A DNA stretch of 64,000 bases from Malacoraja senta (Eukaryota), in NCBI GenBank assembly GCA_038087875.1, contig CM075989.1, positions 11,222,001 through 11,286,000 on the forward strand. Reading direction: 5' to 3'. The notes under the pieces are model-generated. The model was not told the origin of the DNA and searched no databases. It saw nothing but the letters and a program-made list of their open reading frames with translations. Positions within the stretch are counted from its first letter, which is position 1. Every line of letters begins with the position of its first letter. Shown piece by piece: positions 16,609-56,600 of this stretch. The translations under genes were made by a program, and so were the position numbers.

Positions 16609-17743
16609 GTAGGTGTTTCTTGTGGCTGAATTAATGACCAGTTAATGACATTTTGATCACAGTGCACATAGGGATAATTATGTTGCTATTACAAACCCAT
16701 TAACGAGTTCAGAAGAATCTTCCTTTCCCAGAGCACAGACAGAATTGAGGATATGGCTAACAAGTGCAGTGGTTCAGATGCATAGCTCAGATATTTGATA
16801 AGTTGCATGAAGAGGAAAGGATGGAGGATACACTGATCGAGTTCAATGATGAGAAAAGGTTGTGGGAGAATAAATATTCCCACATTTAAATGTCCTTTAA
16901 ATTCAACCTTGTAAATAGCAAAACAATGTGAATATTATTAAAAAATGAAATATAGTGGATGCTGCAGACGTGAAAGAAAAATAGAAACGGTTCTAAATAC
17001 TCAGATCCGGTAGCATCTGTGAAGAGAGAAACAGGCATAATCTATCAGGCCTTTCATCAGAAATTGACAAAGTTAAAAATCAAATGTGTTGTTGCAGAGA
17101 GGGGAGAGGGACACAAGATTTAATGAGGCTAATGGTGGTAGCGCTGGTGTGAAGGCTAATTTCAGGTGATATCTCTGGTGGAAATATAATCCGAATAATG
17201 TTAGAGGAAAGATGCAATAAAAACTACACAGTGGGAGTGGAATGGAGCATTAAAGTGACAGCTGACAGGAAACTCAGCATTCCCTTGGAAACAGAGGTCT
17301 TCTGCAAGGCAGTCCCTGATGATGGGAAAGAAAGAGTTAAAAGGACAGGCAGGTAATATGGTTAACTGTTAGAATGCTGTCAGGGAGGAGAAGATGAATG
17401 CCATGGTAGCATCATGTTGATGGTGGCGGAAATCATGATGGTGGGTGATGTGTTGAATGTGTGGTAGGCACGGATAATTGGAACCCTATTGTTGTGGTAT
17501 GGGGTTCATGGAACAGACCTCTCACAGTTTCATCATCCCAGGTGAAGCGGTGATTCCGTTTCACGCATTAGGGCCTCCACTCCATTTCAGAAACCAAACA
17601 AATTGGATGATTGCTTTGTATGGCATGTTTGCACGCATGTTACTCGTGTATGTGCAGCAAAGATCCACTAAGGTCTAGGGGGAGGGCGGGAGTTTGCTAT
17701 ATGAGGATGAATTGAGTTGACTGGGCCTGTATTCTAGAGAGTG

Positions 17744-19830
17744 TAGGTATGTTACAAAACTTACCTTCAGTCGCGCTGTAATTCTGCCACTGGCCGTGTG
17801 CGCGATTTTGGCGCCTTTAAGGGGGGGGCGGGGTTAAAACGCGGTTTATCCTCCCTTGTCCTGGAAATATTTTGTTGGAGTACAAAACTTCGCTGACAAA
17901 ATCGTTCCTACCGGCGTTTTGTGAATTTTTTTTTTATTAAATCGTCAATGTCAGCGCTACAGTCATTTTAAAAGCAGCTCCTGAAGCGTCAACGCCAATA
18001 ACTAGCAATGTTACAAAATTTTGAGATTTAAAAAATAAAGTCTGCAATTTATCCCATCAGATAAAGCATAAAAAGAAGTTTAATTTGACACTTAATTCAC
18101 TTTCATATCTTCAGTATTAAAAAAGTTATGGCCATTATCATACTCAGAAATTAGCATCTAGTTCCCTATTGCTTTTCCATTGACTTAACACAAAAGCTGT
18201 GATCGAGGACAGTTAAAAGCCCATAACTTTCTTAAAAATTATGGTAACTCAAAGAAATTTTCAGGTATTATAGATTGAAGCATTCTGAAACAAATATGAA
18301 ACAATCTTACTTCGAAGACATGAAAGTAAAGCATATAATTAGTTAGTTACCTAATTGTAGCTAATTACAAAATTCAATTACTAGATCTAAACATCTATCA
18401 ATTTCTTAAGAATAGATTAACATTTTTAAATAGCCTAAGTGTCCAAATAACATTCACACAATAATTCACGATATAACATAATTTTTAAATCTAATTTTCA
18501 TGAATTTACAGGCCAAATGGAAGGAATTGAATGTTTAATACCTGTAAATTAATGGGGATTTAATTCATCTTGCGGGTGAGGATTACTGGAACGCGATCTT
18601 TTGGAACGTTCATTTGCGGTGAATTTAACCCCGTATTGGCATGAAAAATACTGCCGTTAATTCGGGGAATAAAATCACCGTGTCGCATGACAAAATGTGA
18701 ATTAAAGGCTTCTTAAGAAGCACTTTTATACATTTAAAGAAAGCACTTTCGTTTACCTGTCCATTGTGTGAAATCCGTCCCCGTTATTGTAGGTATGTTA
18801 CAAAACTTACCTTCAGTCGCGCTGTAATTCTGCCACTGGCCGTGTGCGCGATTTTGGCGCCTTTAAGGGGGGGGCGGGGTTAAAACGCGGTTTATCCTCC
18901 CTTGTCCTGGAAATATTTTGTTGGAGTACAAAACTTCACTGACAAAATCGTTCCTACCGGCGTTTTGTGAATTTTTTTTTTTTATTAAATCATCAATGTC
19001 AGCGCTACAGTCATTTTAAAAGCAGCTCCTGAAGCGTCAACGCCAATAACGGGGACGGATTTCACATAATGGACAGGTAAACGAAAGTGCTTTCTTTAAA
19101 TGTATAAAAGTGCTTCTTAAGAAGCCTTTAATTCACATTTTGTCATGCGACACGGTGATTTTATTCCCCGAATTAACGGCAGTATTTTTCATGCCAATAC
19201 GGGGTTAAATTCACCGCAAATGAACGTTCCAAAAGATCGCGTTCCAGAAATTCTCACTCGCAAGATGAATTAAATCCCCATTAATTTACAGGTATTAAAC
19301 ATTCAATTCCTTCCATTTGGCCTGTAAATTCATGAAAATTAGATTTAAAAATTATGTTATATTGTGAATTATTGTGTGAATGTTATTTGGACACTTAGGC
19401 TATTTAAAAATGTTAATCTATTCTTAAGAAATTGATAGATGTTTAGATCTAGTAATTGAATTTTGTAATTAGCTACAATTAGGTAACTAACTAATTATAT
19501 GCTTTACTTTCATGTCTTCGAAGTAAGATTGTTTCATATTTGTTTCAGAATGCTTCAATCTATAATACCTGAAAATTTCTTTCAGTTACCATAATTTTTA
19601 AGAAAGTTATGGGCTTTTAACTGTCCTCGATCACAGCTTTTGTGTTAAGTCAATGGAAAAGCAATAGGGAACTAGATGCTAATTTCTGAGTATGATAATG
19701 GCCATAACTTTTTTAATACTGAAGATATGAAAGTGAATTAAGTGTCAAATTAAACTTCTTTTTATGCTTTATCTGATGGGATAAATTGCAGACTTTATTT
19801 TTTAAATCTCAAAATTTTGTAACATTGCTA
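17744..19830. mobile_element. Composite rearranged non-autonomous DNA transposon (TAG...CTA termini, hAT-like): left part + inverted right part + complete 1041-bp copy
   Basis: TIRs TAGGTATGTTACAAAAC / TAGCAATGTTACAAAAT; 7-bp TSD GAGAGTG at 17737-17743 and 19831-19837; 17744-18002 repeats directly as 18790-19050; 18003-18789 is the reverse complement of 19044-19830; no transposase ORF. Confidence 0.9.
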
Positions 19831-22759
19831 GAGAGTGTAGAAAAAATGATAGGAGATCTCATTGAAATTTATAAAATTCTCCACAAGCCAGATGTAGGGA
19901 GTATGTTTCTCCTGGTTAAGGAGTAAGAACCAGAGGTCACCGTTTCACAATATGGGGTAGACCCTTGTGGATTTTGATGAGAAGGAATGTCTTCAAGCAG
20001 AGGATGGTGAATTTCTTCATGTCATATGGGCTCCTCATGTTCCTAGTCTGTTTACACATGACTGAGACTTGACACTGAATTCAACAATTTCAGATAATCA
20101 AATTTGGGTCGGACCTGGCCAATTCGGATGAAAAGCCAACCTGAAACATTAGCACTGTTCTTCACACTTCACAGGTGCTACTGTAGAAGTATTATGTGAT
20201 CAATAAATTCAGCTCATATAGATTCTTAGTGAACTGTTTGTCTTTTCTCAAAACCTGTTTCTAATTGCCAAGAAATTCTATTTAACCAATGTATATATGT
20301 GCAGGATTGACCCGAACATATTTGCATTCCTTAACGAGAATGATAGTAGTCTATTCATTCACAATATCTTTGTAGTGGGTGCCATCCGGTAAATTTAATA
20401 ATCTGGAAATTGCCACCAATGCAGAATTGAATAATGGCGTTAGCTTGATTAATCGTTTATCTAATGTTTTTTGATGACTTTTGTATAATTATGTTTATCT
20501 GCCCGTGTAAAAGAGAATGAAAGCAAATTGGGCACCAATTTTCAGTCTCAGCATAAGGTCAGATTTTTCTTGCTGAATTAAATATTCATACTAAAACCAT
20601 TGTTACAAATATGTGGAAGAAACTGAAAAAGGAAACTTGCGTTTATGGGGCTCATTTCTTGATTTCTGGATCTCTGAAAATATATTATGCAGTGTAGTCA
20701 CTTTTACAGGAAACATGGTAGCCAATTTGAACATGGTAAGTTCTCCAAATCACCTCATGTTAAAATGACTAGATCATTTTTTTTTGATTGAATGTTAAAC
20801 ATTGACTGGGACATTGGTGATGATACCCCAAACATTAGCCCCCATCCCCTTCCATTCTTGAATATGCTGATATGGATTTCTTAAAATCCACTAGAGAGAC
20901 ATGATCTTGGTTTAATACGATGTAATTGTTACTTACGGCTTTAAGCAATCTTTCTTCCATCACTGCATTATCCTGTAGAATGACCCTGACTTTCAGCTGG
21001 TATTTACGACTTTAAAAAAAAACCAAATAGCCTATTACTCAGTAATTTCCATCAGATTGCCCTTGTTTGAAATTTTCTTTTCATCACATCACAAGGGTTG
21101 TATGTAATTATAATTGTATTCTGATAATCAAAGCCAGACATTTTTGTTTTAACCTTGCAACGTGGAGAATTGGCAACATGTAGAGCACTGTTTGACTACA
21201 TATTTTTCAGGATGTGTAATACAATGGAAACTCACCTCTCCCCTCTCCTGGATTCCCTAGGAGAGCATTTAGTTCATTTGCGAACTAGAGTGGATTAATG
21301 TGGCATTGTAGAGGAACATGCTTTTTAAACTTGGTGAGCCTCTATGAGACCCAGATTGACAGATGGTTCACTTTCTTGACATTACTGAGAAATAATTTGA
21401 ATTTTTGAACTCTGGCGCAGTATGAAATTATAATCTCCAAATAATTTGACTTTCATTCCAGTTATTAGTACTTAATACACATTAAAATAAGATTTGGTGT
21501 ACATATCAATTGAAAATAAGCTAATCTCTCAACCTTTGCACAAAATAGAGAAATAGTTTGTGAAAAAGCCTGCTGCAATTTGACAACATGTTGCATCCGT
21601 AATTATCCTTTCTGTTGTAATTTAGAAATAATTATGAGTGAATTACAACATGTCCTTATGTGTTTGAATCTTCCCTCCCATCCTGTCTGTTTTCGCCTGC
21701 TACCCTCACTTGTAAATAGTTGGTGCAAACCTGTAAAAGTTTTTTATTAACCCTGTGTCTGACTTCCACTTGAGTTTACTCTTGACCTTTCAGCTTCCCA
21801 CCAGGAAGCCAAAGACTTGACCTCTCTCTTGTCCCCAGCTCTCTGCCCAAGAGCTGCCTTGCATTGTAAATAATCTAGCTGTCCTCATGTTGACTTCCTG
21901 GGCAGCTGCATCCTTCTGACCTCTTGACATCACACCACACCCTCGCTCTCACAAATGTGACAACGGAGCCTATTGTCCCAAAGTGAGACCGAACAAGGGC
22001 AGAAGCTTCAACTGTGTTGAAATCACATTTTCAGAATATGCTCTCTGGGACCTAAGCCCTTGAGAACTAAACTTTACTTAATCACAGCATCTTAAAGTAA
22101 ATGACCTGAAATTCCATAGGTGTGACAGAATATCATATTCAAGGAAAAATTTACTAATACAAATTTAGAATGCTTCCTCACAGATTTATGGAATGTCACT
22201 AGTCTGGAGAAACGTAGCTACATATGGAATCCACGTAATTCAGTGACCTTGCTCTCCAGTCAATTCTGTGTATGAAACTATTTAAAATTTGTCTGAACTG
22301 ATCTTTACTAGGACATTCATCATTGAAAGGAAGTGCTTATGTCGATAAATCCTCATTATATAAAGCAAAGTTTTCATTGTGCCACACATGATCAATCAAC
22401 TAACAGATAAATTGCAGATGTAGTCTTATTATTGATGATACTTTCTGATGATTAAACATTTTTCCTATTAAAGCCCACATGGAAAATTCATGAAATTAAA
22501 TTTAGAGACATGAACTTTTATATGAGACCCTTTATCATAACTAACTTTTTCTGAGAGCTATAAAAATGATATTAAAGAATTAAACTGAGGCGATCATCAA
22601 CATGACAATAATATTTTATTTTTAAAATTTCATTCTCTACAGAGGTGATGGGATTTCAATTTATCTGACAGATAATTTAGTCTGGATTTCTACTTAATCA
22701 CCACAGAATGTGTTCATGAGGTGAGGTAGGAAGATGGGATTAAGTGACTCCAGTCATAT

Positions 22760-53659: not shown

Positions 53660-56600
53660 GTGAATACGAGCGAATACTCTGTACGGCCGTCAGGAGCTAC
53701 TGGAGCTCGGCCGTCTCTACGCAACGAACCCCAGAAGCGACTTTCAACTGCTTCAACTGCCGCCGGAGATCACCAGGACACCATGGTCTAGCGGGCCAGC
53801 TCCCCCGACAGGAAGTGCCCGGAGGCGGCGCAGGGACCGCAAACAAAGACGTGGGAAGCGGGGAGGCTATCGAGCTAGGCTGAAATCGAACCCGCACCAG
53901 CCAGCTCTGCCAAGCATTTTCCTCGCGAATGTCCGGTCCCTGGTGAGTAAAATCGACGAGCTACGGCTGCGGATCACCACACAAAAGGATCGCCGACTGC
54001 AACGCCATGGTCTTCACCGAAACATGGGTCAACGACAACATCCCGGACAACGCCATCGAGCTGGAGGGGCGCACTGTCTTCAGGGCCGACAGAACAGCTG
54101 TGGACTGTGCATTTATGTGAACAACTCATGGTGTACGGACGTTGTTAGGATTGATAGTCACTGCTCTGCTGACCTGGAATACCTGAGGATAAAGTGCAGG
54201 CCCTTCTATCTGCCCAGGGAATTTACATCGATTGTCATTACTGCAGTCTATGTACCCCCGGACGCTAATGCCAGGCTAGCAATGGAAGAGCTGCAAGCTG
54301 CTATCAGCAAACAACTAACTGCACACCCAGAGGGGGCTTTTATTGTTGCGGGTGATTTTAACCACTCCAACCTTAAAACTGTACTCCCCAGATTCCACCA
54401 GCATGTCTCCTGTCCAACCAGAGGAAACAATACTCTGGACTTAGTATATACTATTACTGAGGCCTACAAAGCCCTCCCCCTCCCCACCTGGGACAGTCTG
54501 ACCACCTCTCTCTGTTCCTGCTCCCCAAATACACATCTCGGATCAGACGTGTGAAACCTACCGTGAAGACAGTGAAGGTTTGGCCTGAGGGGGCTGTCTC
54601 TGGTTTACAGAAACAGTTTCAGCAAACAGACTGGAGTCTGTTTGCCACCCAGGCCACCTTTGACTCCCAAGTGGACATCGACTCATACACCTCAACCGTT
54701 TTGGACTATATAAAATTCTGCACTGACAACGTCACTACCCACAAAGAGATAAAGACCTTCTCTAACCAGAAGCCGTGGATGAGCAGGGAGGTCAGACTCC
54801 TGCTGAAGGCTCACGATGCCGCTTTCCGATCTGGCGATGCTGAGGGATACAGCTCATCCAGGGCCAATCTGAAAAGGGGAATTAGGAATGCTAAACTCAC
54901 AAACGGCGGATCGAGGAGCATTTCCAAAACAACTCCGACCCTAGGCGCATGTGGCAAGGAATCAAATCCCTTGCCGATTACCATAAAGTTAACCCCCCCC
55001 CCCCCCCCCCCACCAGATAACGCCTCCCTTCCTGATGAGCTAAACCACTTCTATGCTCGCTTCGACCGGGACAACAAAACTCCAGCCATCAAAGCTGCTC
55101 CACCCCCGAACGAACAACCCCTCAGTCTCTCCACCTCTGCTGTACAAGATGCACTGAGCAAGGTGAATGAGCGCAAAGCTGCCGGCCCCGATGGCATCCC
55201 CGGGCGGGTGCTCAGGGCATGTGCTGGACAACTATCCCTGGTCTTCACTGACATTTTCAATCTGTCACTGGCCCAGGGTGTCGTCCCCACTTGCCTCAAG
55301 ACATCAACCATTGTGCCCAAACAATCAGCTGCAGGGAGTCTCAACGACTTACGCCCAGTGGCACTCACCCCTGTCATTGCAAAGTGCTTTGAGCGGCTGA
55401 TCCTGGCTCACCTCAAAGCCAGCCTCCCCCCACACTGGACCCCCATCAGTTTGCCTACCGGACCAACAGGTCTACAGAGGACGCCATATCGGCGGCCCTA
55501 CACTCTGCCCTGACCCACCTGGACAGCAATAACACCTACATCAGGCTGCTGTTTATTGATTTCAGCTCCGCCTTTAACACTGTCATCCCCGCTAGCTTGA
55601 TCACCAAACTCAGCGGACTTGGCATCTCCACCTCCCTCTGCAATTGGACACTGGATTTCCTCACCAACAGACCAGTCTGTTAGGGTCAACAACCTCACCT
55701 CCACTATAACACTGAACACAGCGTGCCACAGGGCTGTGTGCTCAGCCCTCTCCTCTACTCCCTCTTCACCCATGACTGCATCCCTAAGAATGGCTCCAAC
55801 GCCATCATTAAATTTGCCAACGACACCACGGTGGTAGGACTGATCAGTGACAACGACGAGTCAGCCTACAGGGAGGAGGTCCAGCACCTGGCAGTCTGGT
55901 GTGCCAACAATAACCTCGTCCTCAACTCCAAGAAGACGAAGGAAATTATTGTTGACTTCAGGAACAACAGAGGGGGCAGACATACCCCCATCCATATAAA
56001 CGGGACTGAGGTGGAGCGCGTCTCCAACTACAAATTCCCCGGGGTACACATCTCGGAGGATTTGTCCTGGTCGCTCAATACCTCCAAACTGATCAAGAAG
56101 GCACAGCAGCGCCTTTACTTCCTGAGGAGGCTCAAGAAAGCTCACCTGTCCCCCCAGATCCTGACCAACTTTTACCGCCGTACCATCGAAAGCATTCTGA
56201 CCACCTGCATCACGGTATGGTACAGCAGTTGCACGGTAGCTGACAGGAAGGCACTACAACGGGTGGTGAAGACCGCTCAGTACATCATCGGTGCCCCGCT
56301 CCCTGCAATGGATGCCCTCCACCGAAAACGGTGTCTGAGATGGGCCGGGAAGATCATCAAGGACCGCTCCCACCCTAGCCATGGACTGTTTGCCCTCCTC
56401 CCATCAGGGAGGCGGTACAGAAGCCTCAGGTCTCGTACAAGTAGGATGAGGAACAGCTTTTTCAACAACACTATCACATTGCTGAACTCGGAGTCCCGCC
56501 AATAGATTTCTCCAGTCTCTCCGTCCACATTAGGCATACCTTGAGGGTATTCTTCATATCTGAAGAAGGGTTTCGGCCCGAAACGTTGCCTATTTCCTTC

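What the first reader, a model, noticed from the sequence alone, without database searches (positions are those of the whole stretch)
17737..19837. Footprint of hybrid-element (sister-chromatid) transposition: a DNA transposon that inserted into itself using ends from two copies
Seen: the layout is GAGAGTG | L-end..A..CAATAAC (17744-18002) | R-end reading inward, inverted B..GTTATTG (18003-18789) | L-end..A..CAATAAC..B..R-end (18790-19830) | GAGAGTG. Both internal junctions fall exactly on a TIR terminus (TAGCAATG at 18003, TAGGTATG at 18790). They are flanked by the same 7-mer in inverted orientation (CAATAAC 17996-18002, GTTATTG 18783-18789), the same length as the outer TSD. Removing the insert and one GAGAGTG restores a CR1 motif (LGLYS.E.RK-M.GDLIE.YKI). 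Established: P-element hybrid element insertion and maize Ac/Ds sister-chromatid transposition give inversions/duplications bordered by inverted target duplications. Inference: the right end of one chromatid and the left end of its sister paired and inserted at element position ~253 of the first copy, which predicts exactly this product. I do not know of this being described in a chondrichthyan genome.
Basis: partly seen in the sequence, partly recalled or inferred. Interest (0 to 1): 0.85.

Follow-up and report, generated by a model that had tools for sequence, protein, structure and literature searches.

The report
Self-inserted transposon with one flipped segment
A very abundant 1-kb cut-and-paste transposon sits here as a two-copy composite whose joints lie exactly on transposon ends; this fits a known mis-pairing of ends from two sister copies, but an ordinary backwards self-insertion followed by a flip gives the identical sequence.

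Summary
Window 17744-19830 consists of L-A-t (259 nt), an inverted t-B-R (787 nt) and a full 1041-nt copy. Both inner joints lie on a TAG terminus. The element's own CAATAAC is duplicated in inverted orientation, and GAGAGTG flanks the whole composite. The paired copies differ at 8 substitutions and one 2-nt length change. A related species carries the exact empty site. Contigs of other copies place the family termini at TAG/CTA.

The hybrid-end (sister-chromatid) model predicts this product exactly, but not uniquely. A script shows that a plain inverted insertion of one copy into another (double-Ds-like), followed by inversion of the 254-nt spacer through recombination between the two 787-nt inverted arms, gives the same sequence. 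The two forms share every word up to 787 nt, so only molecules longer than an arm can tell them apart.

My estimates:
- hybrid-end insertion: about 0.55
- nested insertion plus flip: about 0.33
- assembly artefact: about 0.05

The inner joints could not be confirmed in public contigs. This is inconclusive, because those contigs also lack the locus's private letters. TSD length is 7 if the ends are TAG/CTA, but strictly 4-7. The mechanism is known; this would be a new instance of modest interest.

The parts
17737..17743 (.). Outer target-site duplication, left copy (GAGAGTG)
   Evidence: The empty site with a single copy is seen in organism A, contig X2 record 12.
17744..18002 (+). Partial copy 1: left end, segment A and the 7-mer t (monomer positions 1-261, 259 nt here)
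   Evidence: Matches 18790-19050 with 2 substitutions and a 2-nt poly-T length difference.
17744..17762 (+). Left terminal inverted repeat, copy 1 (TAGGTATGTTACAAAACTT)
   Evidence: (D3, I2).
17996..18002 (+). Internal target 7-mer t (CAATAAC) at joint 1
   Evidence: It equals monomer positions 255-261.
18003..18789 (-). Inverted partial copy: right end, segment B and t (monomer positions 255-1041, reverse complement). It is also the left arm of the 787-nt inverted repeat.
   Evidence: blastn gives 99.2% identity to 19044-19830, 6 substitutions and no gaps; I1.
18003..18021 (+). Right terminal inverted repeat reading inward (TAGCAATGTTACAAAATTT) at joint 1
   Evidence: (D3). In organism A, 94 contigs of other copies run on unlike before 18003 (table 7).
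18783..18789 (-). Inverted copy of the target 7-mer (GTTATTG) at joint 2
18790..19830 (+). Complete 1041-nt monomer with both ends
   Evidence: Contigs of other copies start matching at 18788-18790 and stop at 19830.
18790..19043 (+). 254-nt spacer between the inverted arms (left end plus A of the full copy). Its orientation is the only difference from a plain nested insertion.
   Evidence: (I1: 254 nt between arms) and the simulation.
19044..19830 (+). Right arm of the 787-nt inverted repeat (t, B and the right end of the full copy)
   Evidence: I1.
19831..19837 (.). Outer target-site duplication, right copy (GAGAGTG)

Best explanation
A non-autonomous cut-and-paste DNA transposon (1041 nt, ends TAG...CTA, 19-nt imperfect terminal inverted repeats, 7-bp target duplication) first inserted at GAGAGTG in an old repeat. 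Later, with two copies of this same insertion present (sister chromatids after replication, or homologues), the transposase paired the right end of one copy with the left end of the other.

It cut both ends and inserted them into the body of the first copy at CAATAAC (monomer positions 255-261). The piece t-B-R of the first copy was thereby inverted and joined to the intact second copy. The result is L-A-t | inverted t-B-R | L-A-t-B-R between the original GAGAGTG copies.

Shown:
- the structure and both end-exact joints
- the inverted 7-mer
- the single original insertion site
- the empty site in a related species
- the family termini

Inferred:
- that the ends came from two copies in one reaction
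- that nothing has rearranged since

The composite is probably a neutral relic a few million years old. This rests on 0.76% divergence between the copies and an assumed rate near 1e-9 per site per year.
For: - Order, orientation and lengths equal the simulated hybrid-end product. There are 10 differing alignment columns in about 2089: 8 substitutions and a 2-nt length change.
- Both inner joints lie on TAG termini.
- Other copies' contigs start or stop matching at those same termini.
- The overlap of the two partial copies has the same length as the outer duplication.
- One outer GAGAGTG pair and an exact empty site in organism A show a single original insertion site.
- The paired copies differ by only 8 substitutions and one 2-nt length change in about 1046 nt.
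- Where the family state can be read, the difference is usually a change private to one copy. Sites 18938 and 18992 are derived in the full copy; 18575 is derived in the inverted copy.
- This is a one-step route. Hybrid element insertion, sister-chromatid transposition and bimolecular transposition are established for P, Ac/Ds, Sleeping Beauty and piggyBac.
Against: - The same sequence arises from a nested inverted insertion plus one inversion between the 787-nt arms. Nothing in the final sequence separates the two routes.
- Inversions mediated by inverted repeats recur in vertebrate genomes.
- Self-insertions are common for P-derived elements: 3 of 39 mapped hits.
- An earlier, unchecked note reports what looks like the unflipped nested form elsewhere in this genome.
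- The inner joints and the spacer orientation rest on the assembly alone.
Confidence: 0.55

Rival explanations
1. Ordinary nested self-insertion followed by a flip. A complete copy of the same family (possibly the sister or homologous copy of this very insertion) inserted in inverted orientation into the resident copy at CAATAAC, with a normal 7-bp duplication. This is a 'double Ds'-like structure. Later, homologous recombination or replication template exchange between the two 787-nt inverted arms inverted the 254-nt spacer and produced today's order.
For: - The script shows the nested form with the spacer flipped is letter-for-letter the hybrid-end product, and the two share all words up to 787 nt.
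- The arms are 787 nt long, 99.2% identical now and presumably identical at first.
- The family is extremely abundant: word depth in the element is about 1e4-1e5 times that of the flanks. Nested hits into its own family are therefore expected.
- Self-insertions are frequent in P-derived constructs.
- Inversions mediated by inverted repeats recur in primates.
- Delprat et al. state that hybrid element insertion and ectopic recombination outcomes are 'strikingly similar'.
- An unchecked note, s1-187618, describes an apparently unflipped form in this genome.
Against: - It needs two events rather than one.
- The flip rate for sub-kb arms with a 254-nt spacer is unknown and may be low.
- No trace of exchange or conversion between the arms is visible. 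The arms are as diverged (6/787) as the direct repeat (2/259), so there is no sign of ongoing homogenisation.
Confidence: 0.33
2. Assembly artefact. The real locus holds a monomer, or a plain nested pair whose spacer was mis-oriented, and the assembler produced the present order.
For: - The inner joints were not found in public contigs of the same organism. No listed contig bridges 18789/18790.
- X19 and X20 hold only 1 of 4 sampled words of 18750-18829.
- The orientation of a spacer between 787-nt inverted arms cannot be fixed by short reads.
Against: - The duplicated parts differ at 8 substitutions and one length change, so two distinct sequences were read.
- The joints fall exactly on termini with a target overlap of the family's length, which no assembly error predicts.
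- The window has no N in 64 kb despite this hyper-abundant repeat, which suggests a long-read assembly.
- The same public contigs also lack the window's own letters at 18575 and 18938, although they hold the locus's flanks without a difference. Their silence on single-copy words inside this family therefore means little.
Confidence: 0.05

Closest known systems
P-element hybrid element insertion (Drosophila; Svoboda/Gray/Sved, Preston/Engels), as summarised in PMC2775673
   Same: - A left end and a right end from two copies at the same site (sister chromatids or homologues) act as one element and insert nearby.
- The joints lie on the termini and carry a target duplication.
- Part of the P superfamily (Galileo) makes 7-bp duplications.
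   Different: - This is a fixed natural relic in a fish-like vertebrate genome, not an induced event.
- The target is the element's own body.
- No transposase or superfamily has been identified.
- The termini start with TAG, not the CA-type termini I recall for P elements (from memory, not tested here).
- The reciprocal product cannot be observed.
Maize Ac/Ds sister-chromatid transposition and composite insertions (Zhang and Peterson; bioRxiv 10.1101/2020.01.07.897926)
   Same: Ends on sister chromatids are used together. The products contain inverted duplications of transposon sequence bordered by target duplications.
   Different: - Ac is a hAT element with 8-bp duplications, whereas here the duplication is at most 7 bp.
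- The maize cases involve Ac plus a fractured Ac, large flanking duplications and re-replication.
- Here only element sequence is duplicated.
Double Ds (one Ds inserted in inverted orientation into an identical Ds)
   Same: It has the same content and length as this composite. It differs only in the orientation of the segment between the long inverted arms.
   Different: In double Ds the inner copy is complete and contiguous, whereas here its left part faces the other way. The description of double Ds is from my own knowledge. The paper I tried to read on it, English et al. 1995, was not held.
Galileo-mediated inversions by ectopic recombination in Drosophila buzzatii (PMC2775673)
   Same: The same inferential problem arises: exchanged or inverted target duplications around inverted transposon copies fit both hybrid element insertion and recombination between inverted copies. 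Galileo also makes 7-bp duplications.
   Different: There the two copies were 6-7% diverged, so chimeric copies proved recombination. Here the copies were near-identical, so no chimerism can be seen.
Mu killer / 'Ac killer' loci
   Same: All are inverted duplications of transposon sequence created by rearrangement. If transcribed, they form long hairpin RNA.
   Different: No transcription, small RNA or silencing has been shown here. This is speculation.

Membership tests
Hybrid-end (hybrid element insertion / sister-chromatid) transposition product | Both novel joints lie exactly on transposon termini, one a left and one a right terminus. | tested here: met
   Joint 1 is CAATAAC|TAGCAATG at 18002/18003 (right end). 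Joint 2 is GTTATTG|TAGGTATG at 18789/18790 (left end). Family termini at these letters are supported by other copies' contigs.
Hybrid-end (hybrid element insertion / sister-chromatid) transposition product | A target duplication of the family's usual length borders the two inserted ends, in the orientation the model predicts. | tested here: met
   The 7-nt overlap (monomer positions 255-261) is present once at each joint in inverted orientation and has the same length as the outer GAGAGTG. Joint microhomology leaves 4-7 bp possible.
Hybrid-end (hybrid element insertion / sister-chromatid) transposition product | Both participating copies occupied the same site (sister chromatids or homologues). 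| tested here: met
   One GAGAGTG pair borders the whole composite, and organism A has the exact empty site. This feature is also true of the nested-insertion rival.
Hybrid-end (hybrid element insertion / sister-chromatid) transposition product | The two copies were identical when the event happened. | tested here: inconclusive
   There are 8 substitutions and one 2-nt length change in about 1046 nt. At the sites that could be polarised, one copy carries a change away from the family state (18938, 18992, 18575). The other sites could not be polarised.
Hybrid-end (hybrid element insertion / sister-chromatid) transposition product | The product cannot be derived by ordinary insertion plus homologous recombination. 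| tested here: not met
   A nested inverted insertion with the 254-nt spacer flipped is the identical sequence.
Hybrid-end (hybrid element insertion / sister-chromatid) transposition product | A reciprocal chromatid with an excision footprint, or a twin product. | not testable with these tools
   The event is ancient and the reciprocal product is not retained.
Nested inverted self-insertion (double-Ds-like) with inversion between the inverted repeats | After un-flipping the spacer, a complete inner copy is bordered by a direct target duplication inside a complete outer copy. | tested here: met
Nested inverted self-insertion (double-Ds-like) with inversion between the inverted repeats | The inverted arms are long and similar enough for homologous recombination. 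| tested here: met
   787 nt, 99.2% identical.
Nested inverted self-insertion (double-Ds-like) with inversion between the inverted repeats | Both spacer orientations are seen among individuals, haplotypes or sister species. | not testable with these tools
   Public data were available only as k=31 contigs.
Class II cut-and-paste transposon (non-autonomous, with terminal inverted repeats) | Terminal inverted repeats, a target duplication, an empty site in a relative, and many dispersed copies with the same termini. | tested here: met
   - 19-nt terminal inverted repeats, 16/19 matching (I10).
- GAGAGTG duplication and an empty site.
- Word depth about 1e4-1e5 times that of the flanks.
- Other copies diverge exactly at 18003/19830 and at about 18788-18790.
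hAT superfamily | 8-bp target duplication. | tested here: not met
   Both events allow at most 7 bp.
P superfamily | 7-8-bp target duplication and a THAP/RNase-H-like transposase encoded by autonomous members. | tested here: inconclusive
   The duplication length fits, since Galileo makes 7 bp. No coding partner was found in the window and the element itself is non-coding.

The most novel reading that the evidence does not exclude
The composite is a true one-step sister-chromatid hybrid-end insertion. Its 787-nt near-perfect hairpin, transcribed from the surrounding locus, served as a small-RNA trigger that helped silence this hyper-abundant family. [quoted passage not shown]
Probability: 0.05. 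Interest if true: 0.75.

Novelty: new member of a known kind. Interest (0 to 1): 0.35.

Why it matters
If the one-step route is right, this is a fixed natural footprint of aberrant transposition in a cartilaginous-fish genome. It would show that the family's transposase could pair ends from two chromatids. That process causes inversions, duplications and chromosome breakage in flies and maize, and it creates hairpin loci able to silence transposons.

The more useful lesson is methodological. This topology is not diagnostic on its own, because a nested insertion plus one flip gives the same letters. The family is abundant enough for a genome-wide census to settle the question.

Tried and rejected
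- **Independent confirmation of joint 2.** Laying public contigs on 18755-18824 listed no bridging contig. I judge this inconclusive, because the same contigs lack the window's own private letters and the tool warns that contigs drop rare variants.
- **Other copies with both flanks, to measure the family's duplication length.**
  - None in the window.
  - Two metagenome scans with the end sequences gave nothing or four chance 20-mer hits with no further similarity.
- **Host repeat identity (CR1).**
  - Pfam on upstream ORF pieces found nothing.
  - The atlas search was uninformative.
  - The motif occurs only once in the window, and my translated comparison with the LINE at 53.9-56.5 kb returned no output.
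- **Phasing the 8 differences to favour one model.** The polarised sites are spread over both copies, with no signal.
- **Papers not held.** Gray et al. 1996 and English et al. 1995.
- **Rejected mechanisms.**
  - Autointegration of an excised copy gives circles, not a chromosomal composite.
  - Gap-repair or template-switch duplication does not explain end-exact joints with a target overlap.
  - End extensions of 2 nt on both sides with a 3-bp duplication fail, because the letters after the two right ends differ at +2 (A versus T).
Full report
**What is there**

- Window 17744-18002 (259 nt) repeats 18790-19050 directly.
- Window 18003-18789 (787 nt) is the reverse complement of 19044-19830, 254 nt apart.
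- Window 18790-19830 is one complete 1041-nt unit.
- The ends of the unit are TAGGTATGTTACAAAACTT and, on the other strand, TAGCAATGTTACAAAATTT. These are 19 nt with 16 matching (I10).
- The motif TAGNNATGTTACAAAA occurs exactly four times in the 64 kb, all at this locus. About 1.2 matches were expected even with two mismatches allowed.
- blastn of the unit against the window finds only these three pieces.

Write the unit as L-A-t-B-R, with t = CAATAAC at positions 255-261. The locus then reads:

GAGAGTG | L-A-t | (t-B-R) inverted | L-A-t-B-R | GAGAGTG

Joint 1 is CAATAAC|TAGCAATG at 18002/18003. Joint 2 is GTTATTG|TAGGTATG at 18789/18790.

The paired parts differ as follows:

- 2 substitutions plus a 2-nt poly-T length change in A
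- 6 substitutions in the 787-nt arms, about 0.76% overall
- three of the arm differences cluster within 11 nt (18575, 18581, 18585)

**It is a real transposon insertion**

Public contigs laid on the stretch support this in four ways.

- *Abundance.* Summed word depth inside the element is 1e5-1e6, against about 27 in the flanks of run X19. The tool warns this is not a copy number, but the family is clearly very abundant.
- *Outer joints.* Two runs of the organism that holds about 80% of the stretch's words (X19, X20) carry contigs from each unique flank about 25 nt into the left and right ends. The X19 contigs show no difference; one X20 contig has a 1-nt gap.
- *Empty site.* A 537-nt contig of another organism (X2 record 12) joins 17733 directly to 19828. 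This is the empty site with one GAGAGTG, in flanks about 3% diverged.
- *Termini.*
  - Contigs of other copies run on unlike exactly before 18003 and behind 19830.
  - They begin matching at 18788-18790.
  - The family's ends are therefore TAG...CTA.

The letters next to the ends in other copies tend to be TG before TAG and CA after CTA. Two low-agreement flank consensuses read CA-NNN-TG over exactly 7 nt. This is weak support for a 7-bp duplication with a palindromic preference.

**How firm the 7 bp is**

- At joint 1, one letter (C at 18002) could come from either side.
- At joint 2, two letters (TG at 18788-89) could come from either side.
- The empty site happens to read CTA-GAGAGTG-TAG, so the outer repeat is 13 nt long.

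Taking the family termini as TAG/CTA, both duplications are 7 bp. Strictly they are 4-7 bp. Extending both ends by 2 nt fails, because the letters after the two right ends differ at +2. Eight bp, the hAT hallmark, is excluded.

**Mechanism**

I simulated the hybrid-end reaction.

- The right end of copy 1 and the left end of copy 2 are cut.
- They insert into copy 1 at t with a 7-nt stagger, in the orientation that joins the right end to the left target piece.

The product equals the observed order, with only the 10 later differences. The single outer GAGAGTG means both copies sat at the same site, so they were sister chromatids or homologues. Use of ends from two molecules is established for P elements, Ac/Ds, Sleeping Beauty and piggyBac.

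The same script shows a second route to the same letters. A plain nested insertion of an inverted complete copy at t has the form L-A-t [R'B't'A'L'] t-B-R, the double-Ds arrangement. It becomes letter-for-letter the observed product if the 254 nt between the two 787-nt inverted arms are inverted.

The two forms share every word up to 787 nt. They differ only in words longer than an arm. All local joints are therefore the same, and only long molecules can tell them apart.

Several points make this route plausible:

- Recombination between inverted repeats flips spacers recurrently in vertebrate genomes.
- Self-insertions are frequent for P-derived constructs, 3 of 39 mapped hits.
- Delprat et al. 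had to separate these very two models, and managed it only because their copies were 6-7% diverged. Here the copies were near-identical, so no chimerism can show.
- An earlier first-stage note on another piece of this genome describes a 2092-letter 'transposon inserted backwards into its own family member: 7-bp TSDs and two interlocking long inverted repeats' (s1-187618). It reads like the unflipped form. I could not inspect it.

**Weighing the routes**

The hybrid-end route needs one event; the rival needs two.

- If flips are rare, the present orientation favours the one-step route strongly.
- If flips are fast relative to the age of the locus, the orientation carries no information.

Priors for self-directed normal insertion and for hybrid-end insertion look comparable in flies.

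| Explanation | Estimate |
|---|---|
| Hybrid-end insertion | 0.55 |
| Nested insertion plus flip | 0.33 |
| Assembly artefact | 0.05 |
| Other routes | the remainder |

Polarising the differences with the family state helps neither model. Sites 18938 and 18992 are derived in the full copy, 18575 is derived in the inverted copy, and 19067 is polymorphic in the family.

**Artefact check**

I could not confirm the inner joints independently.

- No listed contig bridges 18789/18790.
- X19 and X20 hold only 1 of 4 sampled words of 18750-18829.

This is weak evidence. The same contigs lack the window's own letters at 18575 and 18938, although they hold the locus's flanks, and the tool states that contigs drop rare variants.

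Against an artefact:

- The two copies carry distinct substitutions.
- The joints are end-exact with a target overlap.
- The window has no N despite this hyper-abundant repeat, which suggests a long-read assembly.

**What it is not, and what stays open**

- The superfamily is unknown. hAT is excluded on duplication length. P-like is possible on duplication length only.
- The host 'CR1' identity rests on a motif visible in translation. My family searches did not confirm it. It does not matter for the argument, because the empty site was observed directly.
- Metagenome scans for further copies were blank.
- No function is shown. [quoted passage not shown]

**Verdict**

The mechanism itself is well known, so this is a new instance of a known kind and of modest interest. 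A clear census test could settle it.

Noticed in passing
window 18005-18570 and 19260-19830 versus 17744-18002 and 18572-19260: In organism A (run X2) only the right-hand ~560 nt of the element is hyper-abundant (word depth about 1e6). The left part is 1e2-1e5 times lower. In the window's own organism the whole unit is abundant. The 1041-nt unit may be a lineage-specific longer derivative or chimera of an older, shorter element.
   Followed up: no
window 17734-17746 and 19828-19840: The empty target reads CTA-GAGAGTG-TAG, so the 7-mer is flanked by the element's own terminal trinucleotides in the outward sense. This gives a 13-nt direct repeat around the insert. The chance is about 1 in 4096, and the internal target shows no such flanks. 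Unexplained.
   Followed up: partly
window 18575-18585 versus 19248-19258: Three of the six differences between the inverted arms lie within 11 nt. At 18575 the family state matches the full copy. This suggests one multi-nucleotide change, or a short conversion patch, in the inverted copy.
   Followed up: partly
flanks of other copies, seen at window 18788-18790, 18003 and 19830: Other copies tend to have TG just before TAG and CA just after CTA. Two flank consensuses read CA-NNN-TG over 7 nt. This may be a palindromic target preference.
   Followed up: partly
window 53943-56505, + strand: A decayed LINE with endonuclease (PF14529/PF03372, both below their cut-offs), reverse transcriptase (PF00078) and PF09004 matches, in the GC-richest part of the window.
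   Followed up: no
run X1, laid at window 18792-19830: A small data set of an unnamed organism holds one near-consensus monomer, about 98% identical to the full copy here. Its right flank is different and begins CATTTTAGTTTAG.
   Followed up: no
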